Shown here one piece after another: positions 44,003 through 64,000 of a stretch of DNA of 64,000 nt (position 1 is the stretch's first letter; each line of letters opens with the position of its first letter). Location: the NCBI GenBank assembly GCA_002269645.1, contig NIVC01003302.1, positions 1 to 64,000 on the forward strand, written 5' to 3'. Origin of the DNA: Macrostomum lignano (lineage: Eukaryota). The notes beneath the pieces are model-generated. The model was not told the DNA's origin. It made no database searches and saw only the letters and a list, made by a program, of their open reading frames with translations. The translations under genes and the position numbers were made by a program.

Positions 44003-45643
44003 AAAATAATTTTTTTATTAAAACATCTTAAAAACAAAATGCTAAACATAAAAGAAGCACAATTTCAAACAAAAGTGGCACCATTTCAAACATTAAAGGC
44101 CACCATGTCAAACATATATGTGACTCCATGTCTAATATTAAAGAGCCACCATGTCAAACATTGAAGAGCCACCATGTCAAACATTAAAGAGCCACCATGT
44201 CGAACATTAAAGAGCCACCATATCGAACATTAAAGAGCCACCATGTCGAACATTAAAGAGCCACCATGTCCAACATTAAAGAGCCACCATGTCGAACAGT
44301 AAAGAGCCACTATGTTGAACATTAAAGAGCCACCATGTCAAACATTAAAGAGCCCCCATGTTGAACATTAAAGAGCCACTATGTCAAACATCAACGAGTC
44401 ACCATGTCAAGCGTATATATGACTCCATTTCAGACATTAAAGTGCCACCATGTCAAACATTAAAGAGCCACCATGTCAAGCGTATAAGTGACTCCATGTC
44501 AGACATTTAAGAGCCATCATTGCAAACATTAAAGTGCCACCAGGTCAAACATTAAAAAGCCACCATGTAAAACATAAAAGAGCCACCATGTCAAACATTA
44601 AAGAGCCACCATGTTGAACATAAAAGAGCCACCATGTCGAACATTAAAGAGCCATCATTATAGACATTAAAGTGCCACCAGGTCAAACATTAAAAAGCCA
44701 CCATGTAAAACATAAAAGAGCCACCATGTCGAACATTAAAGAGCCATCATTACAGACATTAAGGTGCCACCAGGTCAAACATTAAAGAGCCACCATGTCA
44801 AACACAAAACAGCTACCATGTCAAACATAAATGGGGTGCCTACTATCTTGGAGTGCTTGCTATCTGGAGATGCGTGCTATCTGGGGGTGCTTACTATCTG
44901 GGGGTGCTTGCTATCTAAGGGTGCTTGCTATCTAAGGGTGCTTGCTATTAGCTGGATGCTTGCTATCTTGGGGTGCTTGCTATTAGGTGGATGCTTGCTA
45001 TCTGGAGATGCTTGCTATCTGGGGGTGCTTGATATCTTGTGATGCTTGCTATCTAAGGGTGCTTGCTATTAGATGGATGCTTGCTATCTGGGGGTGCTTG
45101 CTTTCTAAGGGTGCTTGCTATTAGGTGGATGCTTGCTATCTGGGGTGCGTGCTATCTTGGAGTGCTTGCTATCTGGGGGTGCTTGCTATCTGGGGGTGCT
45201 TGCTATCTGGGGATGCTTGCTATCTTGGGGTGCTTGCTATTAGGTGGATGCTTGCTATCTGGGGTGCCTGCTATCTGGGGGTGCTTGCTATCTGGAGATG
45301 CTTGCTATCTGGGGGTGCTTGCTATCTGGGGGGTTGCTTGCTGTCCTGGGATGATTTCTTTTTGCATTGCCCTTCATTTGAGCAGTTTTTCTATTGTCTA
45401 TGTGAAGGCTTTAGTGGGCCGTCTTTTTGATACTTGTAGAGAGCCAGAGATTCTATCTAGATGCCCCCATCGGGGGCGAAGATTGCTAGTAGTTTTACTA
45501 TAAAAAGTCTTTCTATATCTATATTCATAGTCATTTAAGTTTTTTATAGCCTATCTATTAGGTATATTAATATTCATAGCTAACTAAACTAAAAATGAGT
45601 TGTCTATCTGTGAATGATAATGATAATAATGATAAAATATATA

Positions 45644-45948
45644 CTTTATTTTATCATTATATCATAGTGAATGATAGAACTATTGCCATTGAATGAAAAT
45701 TATTAAAAGTTATAAGAAGGTATATGAAATTAGTTAACTTTTTTGCTAAAATCAATTGCACATGTACATATATATGTGTATCAATATGTCAATATGTCAA
45801 TGTGATATCAATATCAATATATATGTATGTGTGCAATTGATTTTAGCAAAAAAGTTAACTAATTTCATATACCTTCTTATAACTTTCAATAATGTTCATT
45901 CAATGGCAATAGTTCAATCATTCACTATGATGTAATGATAAAATAAAG
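45644..45948. mobile_element. Foldback / long inverted repeat (~125-bp arms, ~60-bp spacer)
   Basis: CTTTATTTTATCATT...ATCAATTGCACA is mirrored by TGTGCAATTGAT...AATGATAAAATAAAG with few mismatches. Confidence 0.8.
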
Positions 45949-46515
45949 AGTGACAACAATAGTTTAGCCTCATTAGGTCTCATTTATTATATAAAAATAA
46001 TGGCTAGGATTGCATTAGTCTTAACTTTAGCCCCCACTATCCCAACCATACAATGTGCATATAGTCTGAAAAACTGCTTCTTATAATTCCTTGGTCCTGG
46101 GGACTTAAGAACTTACTTAGGACCCTTTGCATTGTAAGTGAAAATATTATTTCCCTAATTTTCGCCTTATCCCATCTATACAATGTGCACATGGAGTAAT
46201 TTTTTTGCTTAGTCTCCAACCCTAGAAACTTAAGAACTCTCTCACAAAAGCTATGACAGTGGCAGCATTCATTCATTTCTCCTATTCTGTCTCCTCCCAC
46301 CTATTAAATTAAGGGCTCCAATGGTGCATTGGCTCCAATATTACTAGGAAATATGCATTCCTGTAATAACCATATCTATATACATATATATAGTCCAAAA
46401 AATTCTGCATACATAACTTAGTCATAGAAATGCTAAACTTGCTCTGGCACTGCCATGGTTGCTAATCTATAATACAGGAATAATCTGACACTGCTGTGAA
46501 TGCGCACACCTGCAA

Positions 46516-49500
46516 ATGCCGCCAGTAGTCATGGATGCAATTTCCGAAGAAAAAGTGGCCAAACTGCTGGACTTCAATCACAAGCTGGACATCGGCCTGC
46601 TGGACTCCGTTGTCACCCTCATGTACAGCAGCACCGGCAGCCAGCAGCAGATGGCGCAGCAGGTGCTCACCACCCTCAAGGAGCACCCAGACGCCTGGAC
46701 CCGGGTGGACTCAATTCTGGAGTACAGCGGCAACCAGCAGAGCAAGTATTACGCGCTGCAGATTCTGGAGAACCTCATCAAGACCCGCTGGAAGGTTCTG
46801 CCCAGGGAGCAGTGCGAGGGCATCAAGCGCTACATTGTCGGCTTGGTGATTAAGACTTCCTCCAATCCGCAAATGCTGGAGAGCGAGAAGGTGTACCTGG
46901 GCAAGCTCAACATGATCCTGGTGCAGATTCTCAAGCACGAGTGGCCGAAGAACTGGCCCAGCTTCATCAGCGACATCGTCGGCAGCAGCAAGTCGAACGA
47001 GTCGCTGTGCCAGAACAACATGGTCATCCTCAAGCTGCTCAGCGAGGAAGTATTCGAATTCAACTCTGGCCAGCTCACCCAGGTGAAGGCTCGCCACCTC
47101 AAGGACAACATGTGCGCCGAGTTCTCCCTGATCTTCCAGCTATGCCAGCACGTGCTGGACAATTCGCAGAACGCGCCCCTGGTGGCGGCCACACTGGAGA
47201 CTCTGCTGAAGTTCACGCACTGGATCCCGCTGGGCTACCTGTTCCAGACCAAGCTCATCGCCACCCTGGTGCACAAGTTCCTCAACGTGCCCATGTTCCG
47301 CAACGTGACGCTCAAGTGCCTCACCGAGATCGCGGGAGTCCAGACCAGCGATTACAATGACCAGTTCGTGCAGCTGTTCTGCCTCACCACCGAGAGGCTC
47401 AAGGAGATGCTGCCCATCAACACCAACATCCGGGAGGCCTACCAGCGCGGCCGGGATGACGAGCAGAACTTCATCCAGAACCTCAGCCTCTTCTACTGCA
47501 CCTTCTTGAGGGAGCACGCCTCTCTGGTGGAGACCAGTTCCGCTCTGCAGGTTGGTGGGGACCCGCAATGGCTTCATGTTCCCTGGGCATCATAGACACA
47601 CGGATCATGTTCCCTGGGCATTAGGGACCCACAGAGCATGTTCCGTGGGCATCAGGGACCCACAGATCATGTTCCCTGGGCATCAGGGACCCACAGATCA
47701 TGTTCCCTGGGCATCAGGGACCCACAGATCATGTTCCCTGGGCATCAGAGACCCACAGATCATGTTCCCTGGGCATCAGAGACCCACAGATCATGTTACC
47801 TAGGCATCAGAACCGTCAGATCAGGGTTAGGGTCAGTGTTAATTAGGTCAGCTTAATCTAGTTCATTTAAAGCAATTTTATTTTCACTGCAGTTATCCTA
47901 CTCATAGTAGGCAGGAGTGAATGTGAAGTGAACCTCATGCAAATAAAACCTTTCTAACCCTCAGGGCCACTTCTCGGACGCACTGACCTACCTGGTGCTG
48001 ATCTCTGAGGTTGACGAAGTTGAGATCTTCAAGATCTGTCTGGAGTACTGGAACTCGCTGTGCACCGAGTTGTACCGGGAGAACCCGTTCGTCAGCGTCC
48101 TGCCCGAGGTCGGCCGGCCGGACAGGCGGCGGGTGTACTGGCCGGTGCTCTCCAGCCTCCGCCGCATCATGATCAGCCGCATGGCCAAGCCCGAGGAGGT
48201 GCTGGTGGTGGAGAACGAGCAGGGCGAGGTGGTGCGCGAGTTCATGAAGGACACGGACAGCGTGGCGCTGTACAAGAGCATGCGGGAGACCCTGGTGTAC
48301 CTGACTCACCTGGACCCGGTGGAGACTGAGCGCGTCATCACCGAGAAGCTGCTCCGCCAGGTTGACGGGTCCGAGTGGTCCTGGAAGAACCTCAGCACCC
48401 TGTGCTGGGCCGTGGGCTCCATCTCGGGCGCCATGAACGAGGACGACGAGCGGCGCTTCATCGTGGTGGTCATCCGGGAGCTGCTGGGTCTGTGCGAGCA
48501 CAAGCAGGTGAGGCCTTGGGGCGGCGGCAGCTGAGCCCGTTTGGGGCTCAGGCGGTTCGATCCCATGAGGCCCGGACCCCAAGACAGAGGTAGGCAGGCA
48601 GGCAGCGCCCTGAGGCAGCGCCCTGAGCCCCTCTGCAGACTGGGTTAAAATTAGAGGCCTTGGGGCTGGGGTTCTGCTGTGGTGCACCCATGGCAGTCCA
48701 GTGTGTCTATCATGTATCTGGGCGGTCGGGGCATATAAGCAACTACAACAAATATGCTTAAAAACTGTTGCAGGGCAAGGACAACAAAGCAATTGTGGCT
48801 GCCAACATCATGTACGTGGTCGGGCAGTATCCCCGCTTCCTGCGAGCGCACTGGCGCTTCCTCAAGACTGTCGTGAACAAGCTGTTCGAGTTCATGCACG
48901 AGACCCACGAGGGGGTTCAGGTGAGACTCGAATGCTTTCCAGTGCAAGATTTTTCATCTGTTAGTCCCAGTACAAGATTGTCCCACTGGTAATCCCCAAA
49001 AATATCCCACAGCTAATCCCAGTGGTAGATTATATCCCACAGCTAATCCCAGTGGTATATTATATCCCACAGCTAATCCCAGTAATAGATTATATCCCAC
49101 AGCTAATCCCAGTGATAGATTATATCCCACAGCTAATCCCAGTGATAGATTATATCCCACAGTTAATCCCTCCCCACCCCGCCAGGACATGGCCTGTGAC
49201 ACGTTCATCAAGATCGCCAACAAGTGCCGGCGCCAGTTCGTGCAGCTGCAGGCCGGCGAGGTGACTCCCTTTGTTGAAGAGATTCTGTGCAACCTGAGCT
49301 CCATCATCTGCGACCTGCAGCCGGCCCAGGTGCACACATTCTACGAGGCCCTGGGCATGATGATCGGGGCTCAGCCGGACAGGCAGCAGCAGGACATCAT
49401 GATTGAGCAGCTGTTCTGCCTGCCTAACCAGGTGCGACTGCTCAGCCATGCCGCTGTTTCACTGGAATCAAAGATGTCATAGCAACCGCTTATTTTCCTG

Positions 49501-52189
49501 GAAGCATATGCCCTAGAAACGGTTTTTCTTATTCTGAAAATCGAATTCTGTTACCATAGCAACCGGTTTTTCTCATTCTGGTAATAACCTGTTACCATAG
49601 CAACCGGTTCTTCATTCTGGAAATCTAATTCTGTTACCATAGCAACCGGTTCTTCATTCTGGAAATCTGATCTGTTACCATAGCAACCGGTTTTTCTCAT
49701 TCTGGAAATCTAATTCTGTTACCATAGCAACCGGTTCTTCATTCTGGAAATCTAATTCTGTTACCATAGCAACCGGTTCTTCATTCTGGAAATCTAATTC
49801 TGTTACCATAGCAACCGGTTCTTCATTCTGGAAATCTAATTCTGTTATCATAGCAACCGGTTCTTCATTCTGGAAATCTGATCTGTTACCATAGCAACCG
49901 GTTTTTCTCATTCTGGAAATCTAATTCTGTTACCATAGCAACCGGTTTTTCTCATTCTGGAAATCTAATTCTGTTACCATAGCAACCGGTTCTTCATTCT
50001 GGAAATCTAATTTTAAAGTTTCACCTCCCCCTTTGCCGCAGGTCTGGGACGGCATCATCCAGATGGCTGCACAGAACGTGGAAAGCCTTCAGGAGCCGGA
50101 CACGGTGCGCCAGCTCTCCGTCCTGCTGCGCACCAACGTCAGCGCCTGCCGCAGCCTCGGCCACCCCTACGTGCGCCAGCTCGGCCGCAACTTCATGGAC
50201 ATGCTCAGCCTGTACAAACTGCTCAGCGAGGACATCAGCAAGGCGGTGGTCGCGCACGGCGAACTGGTGGCCAAGCAGCCGCTGATCCGGGCGATGCGCG
50301 GCGTCAAAAAGGAGACGCTGCGACTGCTCGACTGCTGGGTCGGCCGCAGCACTGACCCGGCCCTGGTGTCCGACAAGTTCGTGCCGCCCCTGTGCGAGGC
50401 CGTGCTTCTCGACTACCAGCGGAATGTCGCCTCTGCCAGGTATGGCGCTGCTGGACTCCTCCCTTCGGTGGCCCCACTGTGCTCAAGTGACCCCGGGTGT
50501 CCTCATCTGTCCTGATATGACCCCGCTTTCATGTCTTCTAGGAATCCCGCTGTCCTTATCTGTCCTGATATGACCCCGCTTTCATGTCTTCTAGGGATCC
50601 CGCTGTCCTTGTCTGTCCTGATATGAACCCGCTTTCATGTCTTCTAGGAATCCCGCTGTCCTTATCTGTCCTGATATGACCCCGCTTTCATGTCTTCTAG
50701 GGATCCCGCTGTCCTTGTCTGTCCTGATATGACCCCGCTTTCATGTCTTCTAGGAATCCCGCTGTCCTTATCTGTCCTGATATGACCCCGCTTTCATGTC
50801 TTCTAGGGATCCCGCTGTCCTTGTCTGTCCTGATATGACCCCGCTTTCATGTCTTCTAGGGATCCCGCTGTCCTTATCTGTCCTCAGGCGACCCCGCTGT
50901 CCTCAGATGACACCATAGTCAATAGAAAATTAGAAAGCCAATAAAGCGCATCAATTCATGATTATCCCCATGACACCCCGCAGAGAGCCGGAGGTGCTGG
51001 CCCTGCTGGCCACCATAGTCAGCAAGCTGGGCGAGCAAGCCAGTCAGCACGTGCCCCCGATGCTGGACGCCGTGTTCGAATGCACCCTGGAGATGCTCAG
51101 CCAAGACCAGCACGAGTTCCCGGAGCACCGGTTGAACCTGTTCACCCTTCTGGAGGCCGTCACTCAGAGCTGCTTCACCACCCTCATCCGCCTGCCCACC
51201 GACCGCCTGCGCATCGTGCTGGAGAGCGTGCTGTGGGCCGTGCGGCACAGCTTGAGGTCCGTCAGCGAGACCGGCCTCAGCATCGTGCTCCGCCTGCTGC
51301 AGAAGGTCGACTGCCTGGACCCGGCCGCTGCCGGCCAGTTCCACGCCAACTTCTTCATGAGCCTGCTCCAGCACCTGTTCTCCGTGCTCACCGACCCGCT
51401 GCAGGCCGGCCAGCTGTCTCAGGTGAGCTGCCGGAGGTTTTTCACTTCTGGTGTTCATGAGATGCCAGCCACTCCCAGAAACTCGCCAGATCCCGGCCAC
51501 TCCGACAATCCCAGAAGATCCCCAGAGATCCCAGCCACAATCACAGGAGATCCCAGCCACAATCCCAGGAGATCCCAGCCACAATCCCATGAGATCCCAG
51601 CCACAATCCCAGGATATCCCAGCCACAATCCCCAGAGATCCCAGCCACAATCCCAGGAGATCCCAGCCACAATCCCCAGAGATCCCAGCCACAATCACAG
51701 GAGATCCCAGTCACAATCCCTAGAGATCTCAGCCACAATCCCAGGAGATCCCAGCCACAGTCCCAGGAAATCCCAGTCATCAAGCTCCCCCCTGGCTCGC
51801 AGGTGAGCTCGGTGCTGTGCCTGATGTTTTCCCTGTGCGAGCGGGACCGGCTGCACACGCAGCTGCAGGCCAGCGTGAGCAACAGCGAGTTTGTGCTGCA
51901 GTCGCTCAGCGCGCTGCTGTCGGAGGCCTACCCGCACCTGCAGCGGCCGCAGATCGCCGTGTTCGTCCAGGGCTGCTTCTCGTTCAACGCCGACCAGAAG
52001 CGATTCCGCGAGCACCTGCGCGACTTCCTGGTGCAGATTCGCGAGTTCACCGGCGAGGACCTGAGCGACCTGTACCTGGAGGAGCAGCAGGAGGAGATCC
52101 GGCGGGCCCAGGAGGCCAAGCTGGCCCAGCAGTGCACCGTGCCCGGCATCCTCAACCCGCACGAGGTTCAGGACGCCATGGAGGACTGA
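46516..52189 (+). CDS. XPO1: Exportin-1 / CRM1, 1064 aa, 7 exons, intact frame
   Basis: Exons 46516-47550, 47965-48507, 48774-48920, 49186-49431, 50042-50439, 50984-51422, 51803-52189 (3195 nt). Motifs [42 protein letters not shown] (HEAT9 loop), [44 protein letters not shown]. Confidence 0.97.
47572..47810. repeat. 31-mer AGATCATGTTCCCTGGGCATCAGGGACCCAC in XPO1 intron 1
   Basis: Tandem units visible. Confidence 0.93.
49001..49170. repeat. 30-mer ATCCCACAGCTAATCCCAGTGATAGATTAT in XPO1 intron 3
   Basis: Tandem units visible. Confidence 0.93.
49545..50012. repeat. 42-mer TTCTGTTACCATAGCAACCGGTTCTTCATTCTGGAAATCTAA in XPO1 intron 4
   Basis: Tandem units visible. Confidence 0.95.
50506..50885. 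repeat. 53-mer x~7 in XPO1 intron 5
   Basis: CTGTCCTGATATGACCCCGCTTTCATGTCTTCTAGGGATCCCGCTGTCCTTAT units visible. Confidence 0.95.
51517..51765. repeat. 22-mer GAGATCCCAGCCACAATCCCAG in XPO1 intron 6
   Basis: Tandem units visible. Confidence 0.93.
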
Positions 52190-52828: not shown

Positions 52829-53440
52829 ACCCTTTGATGCAGCTGTGCTACCCTTTGATGCAGCTGTGCTACCCTTTGATGGAGCTCTGCTACCCTTTGA
52901 TGGAGCTGTGCTACCCTTTGATGGAGCTGTGCTACCCTTTGATGGAGCTCTGCTACCCTTTGATGGAGCTCTGCTACCCTTTGATGGAGCTGTGCTACCC
53001 TTTGATGCAGCTGTGCTACCCTTTGATGGAGCTGTGCTACCCTTTGATGGAGCTCTGCTACCCTTTGATGGAGCTCTGCTACCCTTTGATGGAGCTGTGC
53101 TACCCTTTGATGGAGCTGTGCTACCCTTTGATGGAGCTCTGCTACCCTTTGATGGAGCTGTGCTACCCTTTGATGGAGCTCTGCTACCCTTTGATGGAGC
53201 TGTGCTAACCTTTGATGGAGCTCTGCTACCCTTTGATGGAGCTCTGCTACCCTTTGATGGAGCTCTGCTACCCTTTGATGGAGCTGTGCTACCCTTTGAT
53301 GGAGCTCTGCTACCCTTTGATGGAGCTCTGCTACCCTTTGATGGAGCTCTGCTACCCTTTGATGGAGCTGTGCTAACCTTTGATGGAGCTCTGCTACCCT
53401 TTGACGGAGCTGCGCTGCCCTTTGACGGAGCTGCGCTGCC
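52829..53440. repeat. 21-mer CCCTTTGATGGAGCTGTGCTA downstream of XPO1
   Basis: Tandem units visible. Confidence 0.95.
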
Positions 53441-54220: not shown

Positions 54221-54424
54221 TCACTTTGGTGGCGGCTGCTGCTGCGGCTCCTGCTGTCCGCCAGGAGCCTGGTAGCGCTCGTTGTTAGGGTTCAGCTGGG
54301 TGGCGTGGTTATCCAGGTCCGCCTTGGTGCCGGTGCCCTGGTAGCCGGGCTGGTGGCCCGCGTAGCGCTCATTGTTGGGGTTGCACTGGTTGGACTTGTT
54401 GTCGCTGGCAGCTTTGTCAGACAT
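54221..54424 (-). CDS. Uncharacterised 67-aa N/Q/G-rich micro-protein, paralog A (double DNxxNQxNPNNxxY motif)
   Basis: MSDKAASDNKSNQCNPNNERYAGHQPGYQGTGTKADLDNHATQLNPNNERYQ...; strongly GC3-biased codons; two close paralogs nearby; AG acceptor 10 nt before the ATG. Confidence 0.85.
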   Translation of the reverse strand: MSDKAASDNKSNQCNPNNERYAGHQPGYQGTGTKADLDNHATQLNPNNERYQAPGGQQEPQQQPPPK

Positions 54425-54558
54425 GTTGCTAATCTGGATTAGTAGCTGGATTTACTAGTCTGTGTGTAATGCGTTTGATCACTCTGAGGACTCGCGTTAG
54501 CTCAGCTCTGGCGGCAGTCGGTGACAGCGGGGAGGAAGCGGCGCTCTGGCTTGGCCTC

Positions 54559-54690
54559 TTAAATACGCCCTCTCAGTCATTGCTAAAAATAGAATCTGAG
54601 AACAACAACCTGCAATAGCATTGGCGCTTTTGTACTCTGATGAACCCAGACTCTCGGTTTATTTCTTGGAAATCTGCCTATTTCCTAGAA
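54559..54690 (-). promoter_or_regulatory. Putative promoter of paralog A: TATTTAA plus paired TTCN3GAA (STAT/GAS-type) sites
   Basis: TATTTAA at 54565-54559 (-); TTCTTGGAA 54663-54671 and TTCCTAGAA 54682-54690. Confidence 0.55.
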
Positions 54691-55269
54691 ATGTTTACAC
54701 AGCTTGCCTGTTTACTACTGCAGTCCAGGAGGGTGTGTGCCGTGCAATTTCGGTTAAGCCGGTCAATTGAATTTGAGTTGGCAAGAGCAGCCTTGTTTAC
54801 TGCATTGCACAATGTCTGCTCTGCACCTGCATTCATGAGGTATAGGCAACCCTTCTGTTTACCACAGCGGCTTGTTGCAAATTTACTTTAGTTTAGGCAA
54901 GAGCAAATTGTGACAGGGCTGAGGACCGGTGTCATGGCAACCATTATCCTAACTTTGGATGCGTTATTTTATTTGGGGCCAGAAGTCATGCCAAGCGCTA
55001 GGCTGATTTCTCTCTGGGGTTTACGAGATTAAAGACCTGTCAATAATCACAGTTTAAGCCGTGATCTGATATCACCTAAATGAATACTGCCGAATCTTTT
55101 ATAGCCGCGCATTCTTGTCCGCAAGTCTGTTAACAAAATTTCAAAGTTCTCTGACTTTCGGTACATCTAAATCTAGACAGTATATGTACGTATTGTACAT
55201 TAAACTTACAATTAATGTACAATAAAGTTTGTCTGCCGCGTATTCGGATTTAAAACTTTACTTGCTTAG

Positions 55270-55790
55270 TGGCGCATACGAACGACATCCTTGCGTCTTT
55301 GACAACAACCAAGGAGAAGAACAACTTCAACAGCAAGGTTCGACAAACGGAGCGCAACTTCAGGTACGAGGGCCAGCAGCTGTTCTGTGATGTCAGAAGA
55401 AGCGCCATCGGTCAACGGAGCGTCGCCTGGAGGTGGAAGATCAAAGAGATCTGTCAACTGATCTAAGAAGATCACACCTCTGCGACTGGAGGAGCTCATC
55501 AGGGGATTAAGTCCACCCCATCGAAGCTGCAGGAGCGATTTCACTGGGACGGCAGGACAAAATTTGTGCACGCTCGTACGTTCAGAAGTCCGCGTCTGCC
55601 AGCAGCCTCAGCCTTAGAGTCGGTGACAAGGTCCTGCTGCGGAACTTTGTCCGTGACGATCTGAAACGCGGCGAACTGAAGACACCGTGGTGTACCAAGG
55701 TATACACGGTCGAACGTGTCGTCCTAAGCAACAACCTGTACGGACTCGAGAGGGAAGTGTACAGCGATCAATGGCCACCAGGCAGGTGAT
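55270..55790 (+). mobile_element. Degenerate Ty3/Gypsy-like retrotransposon pol remnant
   Basis: Fragments KEKNNFNSKVRQTERNFRYEGQQLF (resembles the region before the integrase Zn finger) and LRVGDKVLLRNFVR...GELKTPW..KVYTV (resembles the integrase C-terminal module). The core is missing and no LTR pair was found. Confidence 0.5.
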
Positions 55791-56647
55791 TTCAAGAATT
55801 TCTAATATTTTAAGAGTAAATTTTCTAATTGGCGTCATCTAAAGTACTTGGTGTGAACTAGAGACTGAAAAAGGTGTTTCACTTGACTCACTAGAAACTT
55901 TGTGATTTAGAGCAAATGTAAAATTAATGGAAGATCTAGAAAGTAGGACTTAAACGACAAAGAAGTTTGATAATTCAACATATGCTCAACATTTCTTTGC
56001 GTATCTTTAAAACGTGCCGGATTTATCTCAAGGACAAGCTAGACTAGCTATCTGCGGTTAATTTATTTTTCACATCAAGTCTTACAATATTATAATGTGC
56101 ATTATTTAATTTTGTGTACGAGTACAAATCATTCAGTTCTGGATTGTTGTTGTCTTTTTGTTGAAATGTACCTTGTAGTAATAATTTATTGTCTACTTGC
56201 AATGTTGTCGGAATATTTAAGATAAGATAAGATAAGATAAGATAAGCATAAGCATAAGATAGTTTCTGCTCAGTGAGAGAATTCAAGATAACCGAATGAG
56301 TTTGGATACTGAAAAGTATTTTTATTCAGCTGAATAAAACAACGCAGAATTTTTTTAAGACGTGACACCGGGGCACAGTGGCAGGGCTTGAAGCTTGTCC
56401 GCAGTGGAACTCAATTTTAACAAAAACTGAAAAGATGCTCAATTTAATGCTGTGTTATTATTGCACTACTAAAAGTAGCTGATTCGCAAAAAAATCTTGT
56501 GATTATATTTTTTGTAATTATTGCTCAAATCATGCGTCCTCAAAAGTACAAAGTTGATGGTAAACAGCCACAGAGGCATCAGGTTATTCTACGAGAGCTC
56601 AATCAGTATTTCTGTAACTGTCAGCTCTGCTCCGTGACTTTCGCCTC

Positions 56648-56857
56648 TCAAAACCGCTCATTTCTTCGAATGTCCCCCGACCGGCCCTGGCCGCCGCCTC
56701 CGCCCTGGTAGCGCGAGTTGTTGGGGTTCAGCTGGTTGCCATGGTTACTCAGGTCGGCCTTGGTCCCGGTGCCGCCATAGCCGCTCTGGTGGCCCTGGTA
56801 GCTGGAGTTGTTGGGGTTGCACTGGTTGGACTTGTTGTCCCTGCCGGATTTGTCCAT
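56648..56857 (-). CDS. Uncharacterised 69-aa N/Q/G-rich micro-protein, paralog B
   Basis: MDKSGRDNKSNQCNPNNSSYQGHQSGYGGTGTKADLSNHGNQLNPNNSRYQGGGGG...; predicted 5'UTR intron 57479-56868 (GTGAGT...CCCCCAG). Confidence 0.85.
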   Translation of the reverse strand: MDKSGRDNKSNQCNPNNSSYQGHQSGYGGTGTKADLSNHGNQLNPNNSRYQGGGGGQGRSGDIRRNERF

Positions 56858-56966
56858 GGCCGCTGCTCTGGGGGTGCGCGGTGAGGTGCGGATGCAGTCC
56901 TAAGTCAATCCATGGCTTTAGTAAGAGCTCAAGTCTGAGCTATACTCGTAGGGAACTGAAATTGTG

Positions 56967-57375
56967 CCACAGAGAGAATGGCGCCATACAGGAAGAATGG
57001 CGCCACACAGAGAGAATGGCGCCACACAGAGAGAATGGCGCCACACAGAGAATGGCGCCACACAGAGAGAATGGCGCCACACAGAGAGAATGGCGCCACA
57101 CAGAGAGAATGGCGCCACACAGAGAGAATGGCGCCACACAGAGAGAATGGCGCCACACAGAGAGAATGGCGCCACACAGAGAGAATGGCGCCACACAGAG
57201 AGAATGGCGCCACACAGAGAGAATGGCGCCACACAGAGAGAATGGCGCCACACAGAGAGAATGGCGCCACACAGAGAGAATGGCGCCACACAGAGAGAAT
57301 GGCGCCACACAGAGAATGGCGCCACACAGAGAGAATGGCGCCACACAGAGAGAATGGCGCCACACAGAGAGAATG
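56967..57375. repeat. 19-mer ACAGAGAGAATGGCGCCAC in the predicted 5'UTR intron of paralog B
   Basis: Tandem units visible. Confidence 0.95.
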
Positions 57376-57422
57376 GTGCCGTTCTTGTAAAAAAACTTAC
57401 CGTTTTTTTCAAAAGCTGAGAA

Positions 57423-57682
57423 TTCTTAGAAAAGCAAAAAATTCTTCTCGAAGCTTTGGAACTCGATGAAGAAACTCACGGGTCTGAGCGGCTCCTCGGG
57501 ATTTGTATTTACTATTTATAGCCTGAAATGTGCGTGACGGTGGAAGGAGTCAGAAACTCTGGCTTAAAAGTACACCCCAGGTGCGGAGCACGTGAGAGAA
57601 GAAAAACACGGTGTTTTTGCTTTCGAAATACCTGCCTGCCTGACAGAAATTTCTTGGAAACTTGAGAACTCATTTCCAGGAA
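57423..57682 (-). promoter_or_regulatory. Putative promoter of paralog B: canonical TATAAATA plus paired TTCN3GAA sites and a third intronic site
   Basis: TATAAATA at 57520-57513 (-), about 35 nt before the GTGAGT donor at 57479; TTCTTGGAA 57651-57659; TTCCAGGAA 57674-57682; TTCTTAGAA 57423-57431. Confidence 0.6.
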
Positions 57683-58273
57683 ATTCAATCAAAAAGTACA
57701 TTTAGTTTGAGCAACAACTTTACCCTGGCTCCACCCGAACTTCAAGTCTGTTTATTGCAGAGATTAGAATCAGGACTGGACTGAGAGCGCTTGCGCTGGC
57801 AAGGGCGTGGCGGGGACTACTGTCTGAAAAATAATCGATACTTTTAAGTAGTCCTTGGAGTTCTGACAGAAATTCTCGCGCGACTTGGATTGGACGCCAA
57901 CTCCGAATCGCGCGCTATCATAGGAGCGCATTGGTTTAAGCGCGCACCGCGCCGGTCTAACGGTACCTTGCAGCTGCCTGCTCAGGAGAGGCACAAGAGC
58001 GCACTGGGGTGCTTAGGATGAGTTTCATCTTAGGCCAAACTGAGTTGAAAAAATTCGACAAACAAAAATACACAAAAGACATGCAGGGAGAAGCCGAGTT
58101 CATGCTGCATTTTCAAAGCGACCTTCGAGTTTGAACATGAGAAAAATTTTTAAGATCCAACTTGCTAATCTTGTATTTTAAATAGTCAAATGTGAAACCA
58201 ACACAGACTGCTGTCTTTGTTAATCTTTTGGCAATCTTCTGCATGCTGGCTGGGGCAGTCTTTGTCACCGACT

Positions 58274-58516
58274 TCACTGCAAGGTGCACCAAGACTTCTG
58301 CTGCTCTTGCTCAGCGGCACCGCTGCCGCTGCCGCCTCCACCGCCACTGGGGCCTCCGCCCTGCTGGTAGCGCCAGTTGTTGGGGTTCAGCTGGTTGGCA
58401 TGGTTATCCAGATCCGCCTTGGTGCCGGTGCCCTGGTAGCCGGGCTGGTGGCCCTGATAGCGCTCATTGTTGGGGTTGCACTGGTTGGACTTATTGTCGT
58501 TGTTTGACTTGTCCAT
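58274..58516 (-). CDS. Uncharacterised 80-aa N/Q/G-rich micro-protein, paralog C
   Basis: MDKSNNDNKSNQCNPNNERYQGHQPGYQGTGTKADLDNHANQLNPNNWRYQQGGGPSGGGGGSGSG...; CCTTCAG acceptor ~25 nt upstream of the ATG. Confidence 0.85.
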   Translation of the reverse strand: MDKSNNDNKSNQCNPNNERYQGHQPGYQGTGTKADLDNHANQLNPNNWRYQQGGGPSGGGGGSGSGAAEQEQQKSWCTLQ

Positions 58517-58628: not shown

Positions 58629-61600
58629 CTAGCAATCTTCGCCCCCCGATGGGGGACATCTGGATAGAATCTCTGTTCTCTACAAGTAACAAAAAAACAG
58701 CCAAAAATCCTTCAAAAAGACAACAGACAAACTGCTCAAATGAAGTGCATTGCAAAAAGAAATCATCCCAAGACCGCAAGCATCCCCCAGATAGCAAGCA
58801 TCCCCCAGATAGCAAGCATCCCCAAGATAGCAAGCATCCCCAGATAGCAAGCATCCCCAAGATAGCAAGCATCCCCCAGATAGCAAGCGTCCCCCAGATA
58901 GCAAGCATCCCCCAGATAGCAAGCATCCCTCAGATAGCAAGCATCCCCCAGATTTCAAGCATCCCCCAGATAGCAAGCATCCCCCGGATAGCAAGCATTC
59001 CCCAGAGAGCAAGCATCCCCCAGATAGCAAGCATCCCTCAGATAGCAAGCATCCCCCAGATAGCAAGCATCCCCCAGATAGCAAGCATCCCTCAGATAGC
59101 AAGCATCCCCCAGATAGCAAGCATCCCCCAGATAGCAAGCATCCCCCAGATAGCAAGCATCCCCAAGATAGCAAGCATCCACCAGACAATAAGTAGCTAG
59201 TGCGACAATTTCCTTAGCATTATAGCGGCTCCTTTAAAATTCGCTTACTTTTACGTTTGAAATTGTGTATCTTTTATGTTTAACAGGGTGGCTCTTTTAT
59301 GTTATACATTGTGGCTCTTTTATGTTATACATTGTGGCTCTTTTTTGTTCTACGCTCGTACATGGTAACTCTTTTATGTTTGATACGGTGGCTTTTCAAT
59401 GTCTGACATGGTGGCTCTTCTATGTTTGACATGGGGGCTCTTCTATGTTTGACATGGGAGCTCTTCTATGTTTGACAAAGTGGCTTTTTAATGTTTGACA
59501 TGGTGGCTCTATTATGTTTGACATGGTGGCTCTATTATGTTTGACATGGTGGCTCTTTAATGTTCAAAAAGTTGGCTCTTTTATGTTTGACATGGTGGCT
59601 CTTTAATGTTTGACATGGTGGCTCTTTAATGTTTGACATGGTGGCTCTTTAATGTTAGACAAAGTAGCTCTTTAATGTTTGACATGATGGCTCTTAAATG
59701 TTAGACATGGGGGCTCTTTACTTTTTGACATGGTGGCTCTTTAATGTTGGACATGGTGGCCTTTAATGTTAGACATGGTGGCTCTTTAATGTTCGACATA
59801 AAGTCACTTATATGTTTGACATGGTGGCTCTTTAATGTTTGACATGGTGGCTCTTTTATGTTCGACATGGTGTCGCTTCAATGTTCGACATGGAGTTACG
59901 TATATGTTTTACATGGTGACTCTTTTATGTTCGACATGGTGGCTCTTTAATGTTTGACATGGGGTCTCTTCAATGTTTGACATGGAGTTACGTATATGTT
60001 TGACATGGTGGCTCTTTAATGTTTTACATGGTGGCACTTTCATGTTTGACCTGGTGGCTCTTTAATATTTGACATGTTGGCTCTTTTATGTTTGACATGG
60101 TGGCTCTTTTATCTTTGACATGGTGGCTCTGTAATGTTCGACATGGAGTCATGTATATGTTTCACATGGTAGCTCTTAAATGTTCGACATGGTGGCTCTT
60201 TAATGTTCAACATGGAGTCATGTATATGTTTGACATGGTGGCTCTTAAATGTTCGACATAGTGGCTCTATAATGTTTGACATGGTGGCTCTTTAATGTTC
60301 GACATGGCGTCATGTATATGTTTGACATGGTAGCTCTTGAATGTTCAACATGGAGTCATGTATATGTTTGACATGGTGGCTCTTAAATGTTCGACATGGT
60401 GGCTCTTTAATGTTTGACATAGTGTCTCTTTACTGTTTGACATGGAGTCATGTATATGTTTGACATGGTGGTTCTTTAATGTTAGACATGGTGGCTCTTT
60501 TATGTTTTGCATGGTGGCTCTTTTATGTTCGACATGGTGTCTCTTCAATGTTTGACATGGCGTCATGTATATGTTTGACATGGATGCTCTTGTATTTTTA
60601 ACATGTTGACTCTTTAATTTTCGAAATGGTGGCTCTTAATTGTCTAACATGGAGTCACGTATATGTTTGACATGGAGTCATGCATATGCCTGATATGGTA
60701 GCTCTTTAATGTTTTACATGGAGTCACGTATATGTTTCACATGTTGGGTATTTTATGTTTGACATGGTGGTTCTTAAATGTTCGACATGGTGGCTCTTTA
60801 ATGTTTTACATGGTGGCACTTTCATGTTTGACCTGGTGGCTCTTTAATGTTTGACATGGTGGCTCTTTAATATTTGACATGGTGGCCCTTTTATGTTCGA
60901 CATGGTGGCTCTTCAATGTTTGACATGGAGTCACGTATATGTTTTACATGGTGGCTCTTTTATGTTCGACATGGCGTCATGTATATGTTTGACATGGTAG
61001 CTCTTGAATGTTCAACATGGAGTCATGCATATGTTTGACATGGTAGCTCTTGAATGTTCAACATGGAGTCATGTATATGTTTGACATGGTGGCTCTTAAA
61101 TGTTCGACATGGTGGCTCTTTAATGTTAGACATAGTGTCTCTTTAATGTTTTGCATGGTGGCTCTTTTATGTTCGACATGGTGTCTCTTCAATGTTTGAC
61201 ATGGAGTCATGTATATGTTTGACATGGTGGCTCTTGTATTTTTAACATGTTGGCTCTTTAATGTTCGACATGGTGGCTCTTTAATGTCTAACATGGAGTC
61301 ACGTACGAGTATATGTTTGACATGGAGTCATGTATATGTCTGATATGGTAGCTCTTTAATGTTTTACATGAAGTCACGTATATGTTTCACATGGTGGCTA
61401 TTTTATGTTTGACATGGTGGTTCTTAAATGTTCGACATGGTGGCTCTTTAATGTGTTACATGGTGGCACTTTCATGTTTGACCTGGTGGCTCTTTAATGT
61501 TTGACATAGTGTCTCTTTAATGTTTGACATGGAGTCATGTATATGTTTGACATGGTAGCTCTTGAATGTTCGACATAGAGTCATGTATATGTCTGCCATG

Positions 61601-62770
61601 GTGGCTCTTTAATGTTAGACATGGTGGCACTTTCATGTTTGACCTGGTGGCTCTTTAATGTTTGACATGGTGGCTCTTTAATATTTGACATGGTGGCCCT
61701 TTAATATTTGACATGGTGGCCCTTTAATGTTCGACATGGTGGCTCTTCAATGTTCGACATGGAGTCATGTATATGTTTGACCTGGTTGCTCTTTAATGTT
61801 TGACATGGTGGCTCTTTAATGTTCGACATGGTGGCTCTTTTAGGGTTGAAATGGTGGCTCTTTAATGTTTGACATGGTGGCTTTTTAATGTTCGACATGG
61901 TGGCTCTTTTATGTTCGACATGGCGTCATGTATATGTTTGACATGGTAGCTCTTGAATGTTCAACATGGAGTCATGTATATGTTGGACGTGGTGGCTCTT
62001 TAATGTTCGACATGGTGGCTCTTTAATGGTTGACATGGTGGCTCTTTAATGTTCGACATGGTAGCTCTTTAATGTTCGACATGGTGGCTCTTTAATGGTC
62101 GACATGGTGGCTCTTTAATGGTCGACATGGTGGCTCTTTAATGTTTGACATGGTGGCTCTTTAATGTTTGACATTGTGCTTTTTTGTGTTTAGCATTTTG
62201 TGTTTTTAAGATTTTTGAATAAAAAAATCTTTTTGCACTACTAAGATTCGAACCCAGGTCGTAGCATTAGCAGTCCAGTCTGTTCGCATCTATGCTATCT
62301 CTTGTCTTGAATTGTGGCCCTTATAATTTAATTTTTATAGCAAATCGGTTAGAGTAAAAAGTTATGACATAATCAATTTTATCAGTCAGCCAGTATCAGT
62401 GTCAATTTAAGTTAGCAATATTGTTACACAATTTAAATCAAGTTTTGTGTGCATTTGTTCGGCACTGTTTTCAACTGGTTGTGATGTAATCTTTATCACA
62501 ATTGGAATTCAGTCAGTCAGTTTTTTCTCTAGCATTCTTACAATGCATTTCAGGTCGAAAGAGCTGCTTGACCTTTGCAAAAAAGCATGTTTTTCGAATA
62601 TTTAATCCCTTTAAAATTGAGCAATTTCTTAGCCAAGATGCATGTACCGTCCCAGGAAAATTTCTGATCGAATGGTGCAAGTTTGAAGAAAATCGATTGA
62701 GCCATTTTTTCTGAAATCTATCGCATACCTACCTACCTACCCACAGACAACTCATTTTTAGTATATAGGA
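58629..62770 (-). mobile_element. Non-autonomous Helitron (same family as 43161-45489) with a greatly expanded 23-mer array
   Basis: 5' TCCTATATACTAAAAATGAG at 62770; 3' CCCCCATCGGGGGG hairpin, then GAAGATTG-CTAG|T at 58629. 18-mer array ~58775-59185; 23-mer TGTTTGACATGGTGGCTCTTTAA array ~59280-62175. Confidence 0.85.
62235..62305 (-). pseudogene. tRNA-Ser(GCT)-like segment inside the second Helitron copy
   Basis: Reads GATAGCATAGATGCGAACAGACTGGACTGCTAATGCTACGACCTGGGTTCGAATCTTAG on the minus strand; homologous to 43931-44002. Confidence 0.6.
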
Positions 62771-64000
62771 CTAGCTAAAGTTTTGCCCCCCTTCGAGGAG
62801 CAGAAATAATTAATATTCGTCTAATATAATATACCTTTTAGCAGGAGTACTTTAAGTGTTTTTCTTAAGCTTAAGCTTAAAATAGGAATTTTTGGAGATC
62901 GTTAATAACGCATTTTAGGTAAAACAAAACTATCAACTTTTTACAGTTTTTTAGTTTAGAGCCCTGTATATGTCAACGTGTTTGATAAAAGTTATTTTAT
63001 TTATTTAGTTTATAAAACCCCCAGATAGCAAGCATCCCCCAGATAGCAAGCATCCCCCAGATAGCAAGCATCCCCCAGATAGCAAGCATCCCCCAGATAG
63101 CAAGCATCCCCCAGATAGCAAGCATCCCCCAGATAGCAAGCATCCCCCAGATAGCAAGCATCCCCCAGATAGCAAGCATCCCCAGATAGATAGCATCCCC
63201 CAAATAGCAAGCATCCACCAGACAATAAGTAGCTAGTGCGACAATTTCCTTAGCATTATAGTGGCTCCTTTAAAATTCGCTTACTATTACGTTTGAAATT
63301 GTGTATCTTTTATGTTTGGCATGGTGGCTCTTTAATGTTTGACATGGTGGCTCTTTTATGTTGACATGGTGGCTCTTTTATACTTGACATGGTGGCTCTT
63401 TACTGTTCGAAATGGTGGCTCTTTTATGTTTGACATGGTGGCTCTTTTAGGTTTGACATGATGGCACTATTATGTTTTGACATAGTGGCTCTTTAATGTT
63501 TGACATGGTAGCTCTTAAATGTTTGACATGGTAGCTCTTAAATGTTTGACATGGTAGCTCTTTTATGTTCAACATGGTGGCTCTTTATTGTTTGACATGG
63601 TGGCTCTTTAATGTTTAACCTGGTGGCTCTTTTATGTTTAACCTGGTGACTCTTTTATGTTTGACATGGCGGCTCTCTAATGTTTGACAAAGTGGCTATT
63701 TAATGTTCGAAATGGTGGCTCTTGAAAGTTTGACATAAAGTCACATATATGTTTGAGATGGTGGCTCTTAAATGTTTGACATGGTGGCTCCTAAATGTTT
63801 GACATGGTGGCTCTTTACTGTTTGAAATGGTGGCTCTTTAATGTTCTACATGGTAACTCTTTTATGTTCGACATGGTGGCTTTTTAATGTCTGACATGGT
63901 GGCTCCCAAATGTTTGACACGGTGGCTCTTTAATGTTCTTTATGGTGGCTCTTTAATATTCTACATGGTGGCTCTTTTATGTTTGATACGGTGGCTTTTT
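62771..64000 (-). mobile_element. Third Helitron copy, 3' part, joined head-to-tail to the previous copy; continues beyond the window
   Basis: Same 23-mer and 18-mer arrays and the same linker (AAGGAAATTGTCGCACTAGCTACTTATTGTC). It has a different 3' tail that ends GCTCCTCGAAGGGGGGC-AAAACTTTAG-CTAG directly before the TC of the next copy. Confidence 0.78.

What the first reader, a model, noticed from the sequence alone, without database searches (positions are those of the whole stretch)
54221..58516. Tandem family of three uncharacterised micro-proteins built from a doubled DNxxNQxNPNNxxY motif
Seen: three same-strand single-coding-exon ORFs (67, 69, 80 aa) share the core DNKSNQCNPNN(ER/SS)Y-x-GHQ(P/S)GY(Q/G)GTGTKADL-(D/S)NH(A/G)(N/T)QLNPNNxRYQ. 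Their Gly/Gln tails are free to vary and their flanks are unrelated. Codons are strongly GC3-biased and substitutions in the core are largely conservative, indicating real, selected genes that size-filtered annotation would miss. There is no signal peptide and one invariant Cys. I recognise no characterised domain, although I recall similar NQLNPNN motifs in unannotated proteins, which needs checking. Inference: intracellular, disordered or prion-like two-repeat peptides. Two pseudo-repeats joined by a Gly-rich linker recall amyloid signalling motifs such as the HET-s PFD, though the Pro in NPNN argues against a simple beta-solenoid. With the upstream STAT-type sites, this could be an inducible stress or immune effector module.
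Basis: partly seen in the sequence, partly recalled or inferred. Interest (0 to 1): 0.8.

Follow-up and report, generated by a model that had tools for sequence, protein, structure and literature searches.

The report
Three conserved uncharacterised micro-protein genes
Three neighbouring genes of the flatworm Macrostomum lignano encode tiny, very water-loving proteins built from a doubled ~27-residue motif that is also found, undescribed, in other animals, protists, bacteria, archaea and a few phages; its function is unknown.

Summary
Three minus-strand single-exon ORFs (54221-54424, 56648-56857, 58274-58516; 67, 69 and 80 aa) share a 45-residue core. Their flanks do not align. Coding GC3 is 0.80-0.86, core dN/dS is 0.22-0.53, and no family-invariant residue is changed.

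The window is M. lignano contig NIVC01003302.1. All three ORFs are already called as hypothetical proteins in an RNA-seq-based GenBank annotation, so annotation did not miss them.

They are not a private family. A profile finds 631 clusters (50% identity) in 1.8 billion proteins. Named members come from sponges, annelids, molluscs, rotifers, insects, Euglena and dinoflagellates, and all are named "hypothetical". There are also 171 loci in prokaryotic genomes and 5 in viral contigs.

The repeat unit is GY-G-GTK-ADLDNH-A-NQ-[LCM]-NPNN-x-x-Y. Pfam, NCBIfam, PHROGs, PADLOC, PDB, Foldseek and full-text motif searches give no characterised match. AlphaFold predicts two short helices, each ending at NPNN, and a disordered tail.

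The 80-aa paralog ends in a conserved CaaX-like box (CTLQ/CTVQ).

My best reading is a new hydrophilin-like helix-cap repeat protein, either a stress protectant or an interaction module. The function is inferred only. The HET-s/amyloid and STAT-inducible immune ideas are not supported.

The parts
54221..54424 (-). g1: complete 67-aa CDS (MSDKAAS...QQPPPK, stop included). Gln/Pro-rich tail.
   Evidence: Identical protein P0002 is called in GenBank assembly GCA_002269645.1 on two contigs. The paralog/homeolog is PAA93890.1, 'hypothetical protein BOX15_Mlig011114g1'.
54362..54403 (-). g1 motif 1 (D8-Y21: DNKSNQCNPNNERY). This is a truncated first repeat that lacks the GY.GTGTKA lead-in.
54272..54346 (-). 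g1 motif 2, a full repeat unit (G27-Y51: GYQGTGTKADLDNHATQLNPNNERY)
54558..54565 (-). Candidate TATA box (TATTTAAG), 141 nt upstream of the g1 ATG. Read from the sequence only.
   Evidence: Not tested further.
56648..56857 (-). g2: complete 69-aa CDS (MDKSGRD...RRNERF). Gly-rich tail. The most divergent paralog.
   Evidence: Called as a 69-aa gene in the GenBank record. Its homeolog on contig NIVC01000020.1 is frameshifted.
56798..56839 (-). g2 motif 1 (D7-Y20: DNKSNQCNPNNSSY)
56708..56782 (-). g2 motif 2 (G26-Y50: GYGGTGTKADLSNHGNQLNPNNSRY)
58274..58516 (-). g3: complete 80-aa CDS (MDKSNND...KSWCTLQ). Gly/Ser-rich tail ending in a CaaX-like box.
   Evidence: Called as a 99-residue product that starts at a non-ATG codon here. 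Called as an 80-aa gene on the homeologous contig.
58457..58498 (-). g3 motif 1 (D7-Y20: DNKSNQCNPNNERY)
58367..58441 (-). g3 motif 2 (G26-Y50: GYQGTGTKADLDNHANQLNPNNWRY)
58277..58288 (-). g3 C-terminal CaaX-like box, C77-T-L-Q80. Candidate prenylation site.
   Evidence: The homeolog keeps it as CTVQ. Distant relative P0070 (48% identity) ends in SWCQIL.

Best explanation
What is shown (about 0.9 confidence):
- The three ORFs are transcribed, protein-coding tandem paralogs.
- They belong to a very large protein family with no published or curated description.
- The family's unit is a ~27-residue repeat, GY-x-G-T-G-T-K-A-D-L-D-N-H-A-N-Q-[L/C/M]-N-P-N-N-x-x-Y. Its invariant core is N-x3-Q-x-N-P.
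- Each flatworm protein carries one truncated and one full unit, followed by a free-varying low-complexity tail.
- The proteins have no signal peptide or membrane segment, so they are cytosolic.
- They are extremely hydrophilic.
- They are predicted to form only two short alpha-helices, each stopped by the Asn-Pro of NPNN. The rest is disordered.

What is inferred (about 0.3 confidence):
- They act as hydrophilin-type small disordered proteins. That is, they are abundant soluble protectants (molecular shields) against water, osmotic or thermal stress.
- The helix-cap repeats become ordered only on contact with a surface or partner.
- The 80-aa paralog g3 is additionally prenylated at its CaaX-like end. 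This would place the same module on the cytosolic face of membranes.
For: Coding and selection:
- GC3 is 0.80-0.86, like neighbouring exons (0.87), against 0.42-0.47 GC in the flanks. All three ATGs have a good Kozak context.
- Core dN/dS is 0.22-0.53.
- All 13 positions that vary among the paralogs avoid the 17 family-invariant or near-invariant positions.
- Between homeologs, g1 shows 4 synonymous and 2 linker changes.

Transcription:
- All three are gene models in GCA_002269645.1.
- That GenBank annotation derives from a genome-guided RNA-seq transcriptome (PMC5730564).

Family size and range:
- 92 hits with one protein.
- 631 clusters at E<=1e-3 in an exhaustive profile search.
- 2912 proteins with a broader profile.
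- 171 prokaryotic and 5 viral loci.
- A profile built almost entirely from eukaryotic proteins scores 17 of 18 sampled prokaryotic/viral ORFs at E 3e-10 to 5e-3, with Z=1.8e9.

Hydrophilin-like properties:
- GRAVY is -1.69 to -1.83, Gly 9-20%, N+Q 25-29% and hydrophobic residues 4.5-7.5%.
- This meets the hydrophilin definition of Gly >6% and hydrophilicity index >1 (PMC11277543).

Structure:
- AF2 with 119 sequences gives pLDDT 75-83 over residues 1-50, with helices 3-13 and 33-42. The tail is below 50.
- AF2 with 56 sequences gives mean pLDDT 55.

The motif, not charge, is the functional element:
- Copy number varies from 1 to 4 or more, and linkers differ: acidic in bacteria and protists, Gly-rich in animals.
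- This resembles the LEA group 1 / GsiB 20-mer (my own knowledge).

CaaX:
- CTLQ, CTVQ and CQIL are kept in a homeolog and in a 48%-identical relative.
Against: - No expression, stress-induction or biochemical data were accessible.
- 'Hydrophilin' is a physico-chemical class, not proof of a protective role.
- A very strictly conserved polar motif (N, Q, N, P at or near 100% of 508 units) fits a specific binding site better than a generic shield does.
- Some relatives carry signal-peptide-like N-termini or are fused to enzymes and membrane proteins. So the module is not tied to one compartment or one role.
- Bacterial neighbourhoods show no stress-gene association.
- dN/dS rests on only 10-23 differences per pair.
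- One homeolog of g2 is frameshifted, so not every copy is indispensable.
Confidence: 0.4

Rival explanations
1. Interaction module. The helix-cap repeat is a fold-upon-binding ligand, or a regulator or substrate, for one partner that is conserved across all domains of life. The free micro-proteins would act as small regulators or competitors of that partner. Fused or membrane-tethered versions would recruit it.
For: - Polar residues (N-x3-Q-x-N-P, plus an H/R/K and a Tyr) are conserved to near-invariance across bacteria, archaea and eukaryotes, while charge and linkers vary freely.
- The module recurs fused to unrelated domains: an NTase-like domain with a GS...D.D signature (P0177, P0213), PLAC8 (P0182), a tetraspanin-like 4-TM protein (P0214), a Gly-zipper/C19orf12-like domain (P0164, P0198) and bacterial N-terminal domains (L007, L021, L095).
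- Membrane tethering occurs by tail anchor, TM segment or CaaX box.
Against: - No partner is identified.
- There is no conserved gene neighbourhood in prokaryotes.
- The Pfam support for the NTase fusion is sub-threshold.
- Many of the fused sequences come from unverified metagenome or transcriptome gene calls.
Confidence: 0.25
2. Metal- or ion-binding micro-protein. The Asp/Asn/His/Cys-rich repeats would chelate Ca2+, Zn2+ or another ion, as a buffer or sensor.
For: - The motif is rich in D, N, H and Q. A Cys is conserved at over 90% in the first repeat and a His at over 90% in the second repeat, in an alignment drawn almost entirely from eukaryotes.
- Bacterial and protist members have poly-Asp/Glu linkers and tails.
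Against: - The 'His' position is H, R or K across units (74/15/6%).
- The Cys position is L, C or M (43/33/13%). Neither candidate ligand is therefore conserved.
- No EF-hand, zinc-finger or metallothionein model matches.
- Acidity is not conserved: the flatworm proteins have pI 6.0-9.7.
Confidence: 0.1
3. One reading: prion-like or amyloid signalling peptides of the HET-s type, forming an inducible (STAT-driven) immune or stress effector module.
For: - There are two pseudo-repeats with a Gly-rich linker.
- N+Q content is 25-29%.
- Two TTCNNNGAA sites lie 240-270 nt upstream of g1.
Against: - No amyloid-motif Pfam family hits at E<=10.
- Hydrophobic content is 4.5-7.5% and each repeat contains a proline.
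- AF2 predicts helices and no strand.
- No NLR-type gene lies within 10 kb; the neighbours are XPO1 and the paralogs.
- STAT-like sites are not enriched.
- The family lives as stand-alone genes in bacteria and archaea.
Confidence: 0.03
4. Secreted bioactive peptides, that is, antimicrobial peptide or neuropeptide precursors.
For: - The proteins are small and the genes form tandem families.
- A few distant relatives have signal-peptide-like N-termini, and one has a dibasic site before the repeats (P0216, P0232).
Against:
- The proteins are near-neutral and not amphipathic.
- Prokaryotic homologs are acidic cytoplasmic-type micro-proteins.
Confidence: 0.03
5. Chance or non-functional ORFs, or the real gene lies on the opposite strand.
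For: Each locus also has an antisense ORF of 45-96 aa.
Against: - Homologs of the minus-strand frame exist across phyla, with E down to 1e-25.
- GC3 bias and dN/dS below 1 are seen in that frame.
- The gene models lie on that strand.
- The antisense ORFs are Val/Gly/Ala/Leu strings, as expected from the complement of GC3-biased Asn/Gln/Gly codons.
Confidence: 0.01

Closest known systems
Hydrophilins with short repeated motifs: LEA group 1 (Pfam LEA_5 20-mer) and its bacterial relative GsiB of Bacillus subtilis
   Same: - Small, Gly-rich, extremely hydrophilic and largely disordered.
- Built from a variable number of copies of one short conserved hydrophilic motif.
- The motif is found in bacteria, archaea and eukaryotes (my own knowledge for LEA_5/GsiB).
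- The Gly >6% and hydrophilicity >1 criteria are met here.
   Different: - There is no sequence relationship: no Pfam hit at E<=10.
- The motif here is Asn/Gln/Pro-based and predicted to be a capped mini-helix.
- Stress induction is not shown.
KGG-repeat stress-induced proteins (YciG/YmdF type) and other bacterial small general-stress proteins (CsbD-like)
   Same: - Proteins of 40-80 aa made of 2-3 hydrophilic repeats.
- Stand-alone genes with no enzymatic domain.
   Different: - No match to those Pfam models.
- No sigma-B/RpoS or stress-operon context was seen.
- Unlike those, this family is also widespread in animals.
HET-s prion-forming domain and related fungal/bacterial amyloid signalling motifs
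   Same: Two short pseudo-repeats joined by a flexible linker in a small protein region.
   Different: - No HMM match.
- Almost no hydrophobic residues, and a Pro in each repeat.
- Helices are predicted.
- No partner NLR gene.
CaaX-box prenylated proteins (for example Ras, lamin B and yeast Ydj1, which ends in CASQ)
   Same: - g3 ends in Cys-x-aliphatic-Gln (CTLQ; CTVQ in the homeolog).
- A distant relative ends in CQIL.
- The Cys is exactly four residues from the end.
   Different: - The a1 position is Thr or Gln rather than aliphatic.
- Prenylation is untested.
- Only one of the three paralogs has the box.
Hero (heat-resistant obscure) proteins and other small protective IDPs of animals
   Same: Small, hydrophilic, disordered, cytosolic and without a recognisable domain.
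   Different: Hero proteins are poorly conserved in sequence (my own knowledge). This family instead has a motif that is nearly invariant from bacteria to animals.

Membership tests
HET-s-type amyloid signalling motifs | Match to the family HMMs (Pfam HET-s_218-289 and related amyloid motifs) | tested here: not met
   Pfam-A scan at E<=10 gives 0 families for all three proteins.
HET-s-type amyloid signalling motifs | Beta-solenoid pseudo-repeats with alternating hydrophobic core residues | tested here: not met
   Hydrophobic residues make up 4.5-7.5%. AF2 predicts two helices and no strand.
HET-s-type amyloid signalling motifs | Genomic pairing with an NLR (NACHT/NB-ARC) gene that carries the matching motif | tested here: not met
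   Within +/-10 kb the only called genes are the paralogs and XPO1, on all three copies of the locus. One copy also has an unannotated 144-aa product with no Pfam hit.
Hydrophilins (a physico-chemical class) | Gly content >6% and mean hydrophilicity index >1.0 | tested here: met
   Gly is 9.0, 20.3 and 17.5%. GRAVY is -1.83, -1.76 and -1.69. The definition is from PMC11277543.
Hydrophilins (a physico-chemical class) | Accumulation under water deficit or osmotic stress | not testable with these tools
   No expression data could be reached. The supplement look-up was empty.
LEA group 1 / GsiB / KGG-repeat stress proteins | Match to Pfam LEA_5, KGG or related models | tested here: not met
   No hit at E<=10 for the window proteins or for the prokaryotic relatives.
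CaaX prenylation substrates (g3 only) | Cys at position -4 from the C-terminus, followed by a1-a2-X with a2 aliphatic and X = S/M/Q/A/C (farnesyl) or L (geranylgeranyl) | tested here: inconclusive
   CTLQ (window), CTVQ (homeolog) and CQIL (P0070). The Cys position, a2 and X all fit. The a1 residue is Thr or Gln, not aliphatic. The rule is taken from my own knowledge.
CaaX prenylation substrates (g3 only) | Actual lipid modification and membrane localisation | not testable with these tools
   Needs expression of tagged g3 with and without the C77S mutation.
Prion-like (N/Q-rich) domains | Long (about 60 aa or more) N/Q-rich stretch that is poor in charged residues and proline | tested here: inconclusive
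   N+Q is 25-29%, but 13-14 of the 67-80 residues are charged and each repeat has a Pro. No PLAAC-type scoring was run.
Semialdehyde dehydrogenase dimerisation domain (PF22698) | Domain-level match above the gathering score | tested here: not met
   Two relatives score 26.0 and 26.2 bits against a cut-off of 27, over only ~33 of 165 profile positions. The window proteins score nothing.
The NQxNPNN repeat family itself (undescribed) | Two units with the invariant N-x3-Q-x-N-P core, a preceding D-x-D / [HRK] and a following aromatic residue at +12 | tested here: met
   All 17 invariant or near-invariant alignment positions are present in g1, g2 and g3. The unit profile comes from 508 units.

The most novel reading that the evidence does not exclude
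The NQxNPNN helix-cap repeat is an ancient module shared by bacteria, archaea, eukaryotes and phages, with one specific and still unknown biochemical job. That job would be binding a universally conserved partner or ligand, or serving as the target of the nucleotidyltransferase-like domains it is sometimes fused to. The flatworm trio would be free and membrane-anchored (prenylated) forms of it. This would be a new domain-level family with a defined function, not merely a generic hydrophilin.
Probability: 0.25. Interest if true: 0.75.

Novelty: new variant of a known kind. Interest (0 to 1): 0.55.

Why it matters
A motif that is nearly invariant from Pseudomonas and Nitrosopumilus to sponges, molluscs, insects and flatworms has no model or description in any resource searched here. 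That covers Pfam, NCBIfam, PHROGs, PADLOC, PDB and about 8 million full-text papers. It is therefore a gap in the map of conserved proteins. It is also a typical case of micro-proteins (35-80 aa) being carried along as 'hypothetical'.

The family is easy to study. Homologs exist in genetically tractable bacteria, and M. lignano itself supports RNAi and transgenesis.

If it proves to be a stress protectant, it adds a new cross-kingdom hydrophilin class. If it proves to be a specific binding module, it defines a new small domain.

The animal-type unit also occurs in sponge-symbiont archaea. That gives a possible test case for gene exchange between host and symbiont.

Tried and rejected
- **Profile libraries.** Pfam, NCBIfam, PHROGs and PADLOC gave no family above threshold, either for the window proteins or for prokaryotic and phage relatives.
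- **PF22698 (Semialdhyde_dhC_1).** It is listed for two relatives, but the hit is sub-threshold and covers only 33 positions. I rejected it as compositional.
- **'DNA polymerase beta' label.** This name on a Plakobranchus relative (P0250) has no such domain in its sequence. I treated it as an annotation artefact.
- **Structure databases.** The PDB sequence profile search gave 0 hits at E<=10. Foldseek of the better AF2 model against PDB gave 0 hits.
- **Literature.** Searches for 16 different motif strings found no relevant paper; the single hit was an unrelated modelling paper. Searches for accession and gene ids found nothing. A supplement look-up for expression data was empty.
- **Prokaryotic gene neighbourhoods.** All-against-all comparison of ORFs in 85 loci found no neighbour conserved beyond close relatives. 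The few shared ones were uninformative: no Pfam hit, a CARF domain, or an M48 peptidase.
- **Annotated records.** Plasmid copies are 'hypothetical protein'. The phage GenBank collection has no match.
- **STAT sites.** Not enriched.
- **Antisense ORFs.** Rejected as the coding frame.
- **Unused search.** No result from it was likely to add a name.

Full report
**1. The observation**

The window has three ORFs on the minus strand at 54221-54424 (67 aa), 56648-56857 (69 aa) and 58274-58516 (80 aa from its ATG). Their translations share the core DNKSNQCNPNN..Y.GHQ.GY.GTGTKADL.NH..QLNPNN.RYQ. They diverge completely in the C-terminal Gly/Gln-rich tails.

A tblastn of the core against the whole window finds exactly these three copies (E 1e-19 to 7e-28). 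It also finds the second half of the core matching the first half (E 3e-5 to 9e-3), so the internal duplication is real.

Aligning each gene with 300-400 nt of flank shows identity only in the coding core. Upstream and downstream sequences do not align.

Third-position GC is 0.80-0.86. That equals the neighbouring XPO1 and C2-domain exons (0.87) and is far above the flanks (0.42-0.47). All three ATGs have a purine at -3.

No 19-residue window is hydrophobic, so there is no signal peptide or membrane segment.

**2. Whether the genes are real and selected**

Nei-Gojobori estimates on the 45-codon core give dN/dS of 0.22 (g1 against g3), 0.31 (g2 against g3) and 0.53 (g1 against g2), from 10-23 differences per pair. 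That is low power.

The pattern is clearer than the ratio. The 13 positions that vary among the paralogs avoid all 17 positions that are invariant or nearly invariant in a 56-sequence family alignment.

The window is the first 64 kb of contig NIVC01003302.1 of the Macrostomum lignano assembly GCA_002269645.1. The same trio sits next to XPO1 on two further contigs. This fits the duplicated genome of this species.

Between homeologs, g1 differs by four synonymous and two linker replacements. g3 differs by one synonymous change, two Ser-to-Gly changes in the tail, and Leu-to-Val in the last-but-one residue.

All three ORFs are gene models in the GenBank record. g1 is called as 67 aa and g2 as 69 aa. 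g3 is called as a 99-residue product that starts at a non-ATG codon here, and as 80 aa on the homeologous contig. An allele or paralog is PAA93890.1, 'hypothetical protein BOX15_Mlig011114g1'.

The depositors state that this annotation was derived from a genome-guided transcriptome built from RNA-seq, with trans-splicing and poly(A) evidence (PMC5730564). Transcription is therefore indirectly supported.

**3. What the family is**

A single-protein search returned 92 relatives (E down to 2e-25). Every named one is 'hypothetical' or 'uncharacterized'. They come from rotifers, bivalves and gastropods, bees, crickets, a midge, a springtail, a mite and a dinoflagellate transcriptome.

An exhaustive profile search of 1.84 billion representative proteins found 631 clusters at E<=1e-3 and 185 at E<=1e-10. 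A broader profile found 2912 proteins. These add a sponge, a tubeworm, abalone, Euglena and Prorocentrum.

Pooling 508 repeat units gives the true unit: G-Y-x-G-T-G-T-K-A-D-L-D-N-H-A-N-Q-[L43/C33/M13]-N-P-N-N-x-x-Y-x-G. N(0), Q(+4), N(+6) and P(+7) are present in 98-100% of units.

The flatworm proteins have a truncated first unit and a complete second one. Other members have one to four or more units.

Same-strand tandem pairs of single-exon copies also occur in two other animal assemblies.

**4. The family reaches prokaryotes and phages**

A scan of one genome per GTDB species found 171 confirmed loci. A scan of IMG/VR found five.

The ORFs are 33-70 aa. Examples are:
- MSRTPNDDRSDSMNPNNDAYWDSLDNHSDQLNPNNDRYQG in gamma- and betaproteobacteria;
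- MGKGGGHGHSPNDDRSNSMNPNNDAYHAAMDNHADQLNPNNDKFEGDEE in methanogens;
- MGKYSGTGDKADLDNHSNQLNPNNEEYAGDGEDDE in Nitrosopumilaceae, including Cenarchaeum.

I scored 18 sampled prokaryotic and viral ORFs with a profile built almost entirely from eukaryotic proteins, using E-values for a 1.8-billion-sequence database. Seventeen reach E between 3e-10 and 5e-3. The relationship is statistically supported. For so short a motif, convergence cannot be fully excluded.

**5. The family is not known under another name**

Pfam-A, NCBIfam, PHROGs and PADLOC have no model that matches the window proteins or the prokaryotic and phage members. Two relatives touch PF22698 just below threshold over 33 of 165 positions, which I regard as compositional.

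A profile search of all PDB sequences gives nothing at E<=10.

Full-text searches for 16 motif strings and for accession and gene identifiers find no relevant paper. Plasmid-borne copies are 'hypothetical protein'.

**6. Structure and properties**

AlphaFold2 with 56 aligned sequences gave mean pLDDT 55.

With 119 more diverse sequences, residues 1-50 reach pLDDT 75-83. They form two helices (3-13 and 33-42), each ending just before N-P-N-N. Residues 51-80 stay below 50, and pTM is 0.31. Foldseek finds no PDB analogue.

I read each unit as a short helix capped by Asn-Pro and followed by an aromatic residue. The capping reading is inference.

The proteins have GRAVY -1.69 to -1.83, Gly 9-20%, N+Q 25-29% and only 4.5-7.5% hydrophobic residues. 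This satisfies the hydrophilin definition.

**7. Context clues**

In prokaryotes the gene is usually stand-alone, with no conserved neighbour.

In protists and bacteria the module is sometimes fused to other domains:
- a nucleotidyltransferase-like domain (weak Pfam support);
- PLAC8;
- a tetraspanin-like four-TM protein;
- Gly-zipper/C19orf12-like domains;
- uncharacterised bacterial domains.

This set includes a tail-anchor-like Euglena protein and a few with signal-peptide-like N-termini.

In the window, g3 ends in CTLQ and its homeolog in CTVQ. A 48%-identical relative from an unrelated sequencing run ends in SWCQIL. This is a conserved CaaX-like box, so g3 may be a prenylated, membrane-attached version.

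**8. Most likely mechanism**

The identity statement is well supported (about 0.9). These are transcribed tandem paralogs of a large undescribed helix-cap repeat family. They are cytosolic, hydrophilic and mostly disordered.

For function I commit, at about 0.3, to a hydrophilin-type protective role, with g3 acting at membranes.

The main rival (about 0.25) is that the near-invariant polar motif is a specific fold-upon-binding module for a conserved partner. Its strict conservation and its domain fusions favour that reading.

A metal-binding role is less likely (0.1), because the candidate ligand positions are not conserved: H/R/K at one and L/C/M at the other.

**9.

The HET-s/amyloid analogy fails every feature I could test.

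The STAT-type sites are no more frequent than chance: 23 observed against 16.4 +/- 3.9 expected.

An immune or stress effector role is not excluded, but nothing here supports it.

**10. Verdict**

This is a real and correctly described feature. Its interpretation needs revising. It is not a lineage-private trio missed by annotation. It is three members of a very widespread conserved micro-protein family that nobody appears to have described.

Interest is moderate to fairly high (0.55). The family has no published or curated description, and its function remains open.

Noticed in passing
L092 7527-7769 (contig NIVC01000020.1), homeolog of window 56648-56857: The g2 homeolog has a 5-bp deletion inside motif 1 and one extra G in the tail's G-run. 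It is not called as a gene there, so it is probably a pseudogene. With the extra G the tail would end ...GGHSKK, which is typical of the family, rather than the window's ...GDIRRNERF. The window's g2 tail may therefore itself be a frameshifted version.
   Followed up: partly
window 58277-58288 (-): g3 ends in a CaaX-like box (CTLQ). It is kept as CTVQ in the homeolog and as CQIL in a 48%-identical relative, P0070. This suggests a prenylated paralog.
   Followed up: partly
window 52829-53437, 56968-57380, 58776-59186, 59360-62178, 63018-63222, 63287-64000: Minisatellite arrays (periods 18-23 bp, 11-122 copies) flank each of the three genes. The 18-bp and 23-bp units recur in two separate arrays each. 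The array at 56968-57380 begins only ~110 nt upstream of the g2 ATG.
   Followed up: no
window 46498-52189 (+): An XPO1/CRM1 exportin gene with unusually long exons (first ORF 359 aa) lies tail-to-tail with g1. The XPO1-plus-trio arrangement is kept on all three copies of the locus in the assembly.
   Followed up: partly
window 30311-33214 (+) and 2852-3424 (-): There are spectrin-repeat (alpha-actinin-like) exons and a C2-domain exon. The ORF at 30311-31204 runs through an in-frame repetitive stretch.
   Followed up: partly
L012, L016, L020, L027, L036, L041, L045, L048: Nitrosopumilaceae genomes (including a Cenarchaeum MAG), a Gemmatimonadetes MAG and a sponge (Hymedesmia) Methylococcales symbiont carry the family. 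The archaeal and Gemmatimonadetes ORFs carry the animal-type unit Y-x-G-T/S-G-D-K-A-D-L-D-N-H-S-N-Q-L-N-P-N-N, rather than the usual bacterial form. If several of these organisms are sponge-associated, this could reflect gene exchange between host and symbiont.
   Followed up: no
L041 2858-, L064 2858-, L073 1396-: In Rheinheimera, Arsukibacterium and a Methylococcales symbiont, a second small N/Q/G/K-rich ORF lies ~140 nt upstream on the same strand. An example is MNKNIKPRDNRANQQNSNKGNAGGNRQNAQVHGNRGKQMNPNQGGKKK. This may be a two-gene unit of hydrophilic micro-proteins.
   Followed up: no
P0177 and P0213 (protist-like proteins): Four tandem DNRANQ[M/N]NPNNAQY units are fused to a C-terminal domain with a polymerase-beta-type nucleotidyltransferase signature (GS...KGT...SD.D). 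Pfam support is only sub-threshold.
   Followed up: partly
window 40001-46000: An AT-rich island (GC 0.31-0.38) lies between GC-rich gene blocks. Its content was not examined.
   Followed up: no
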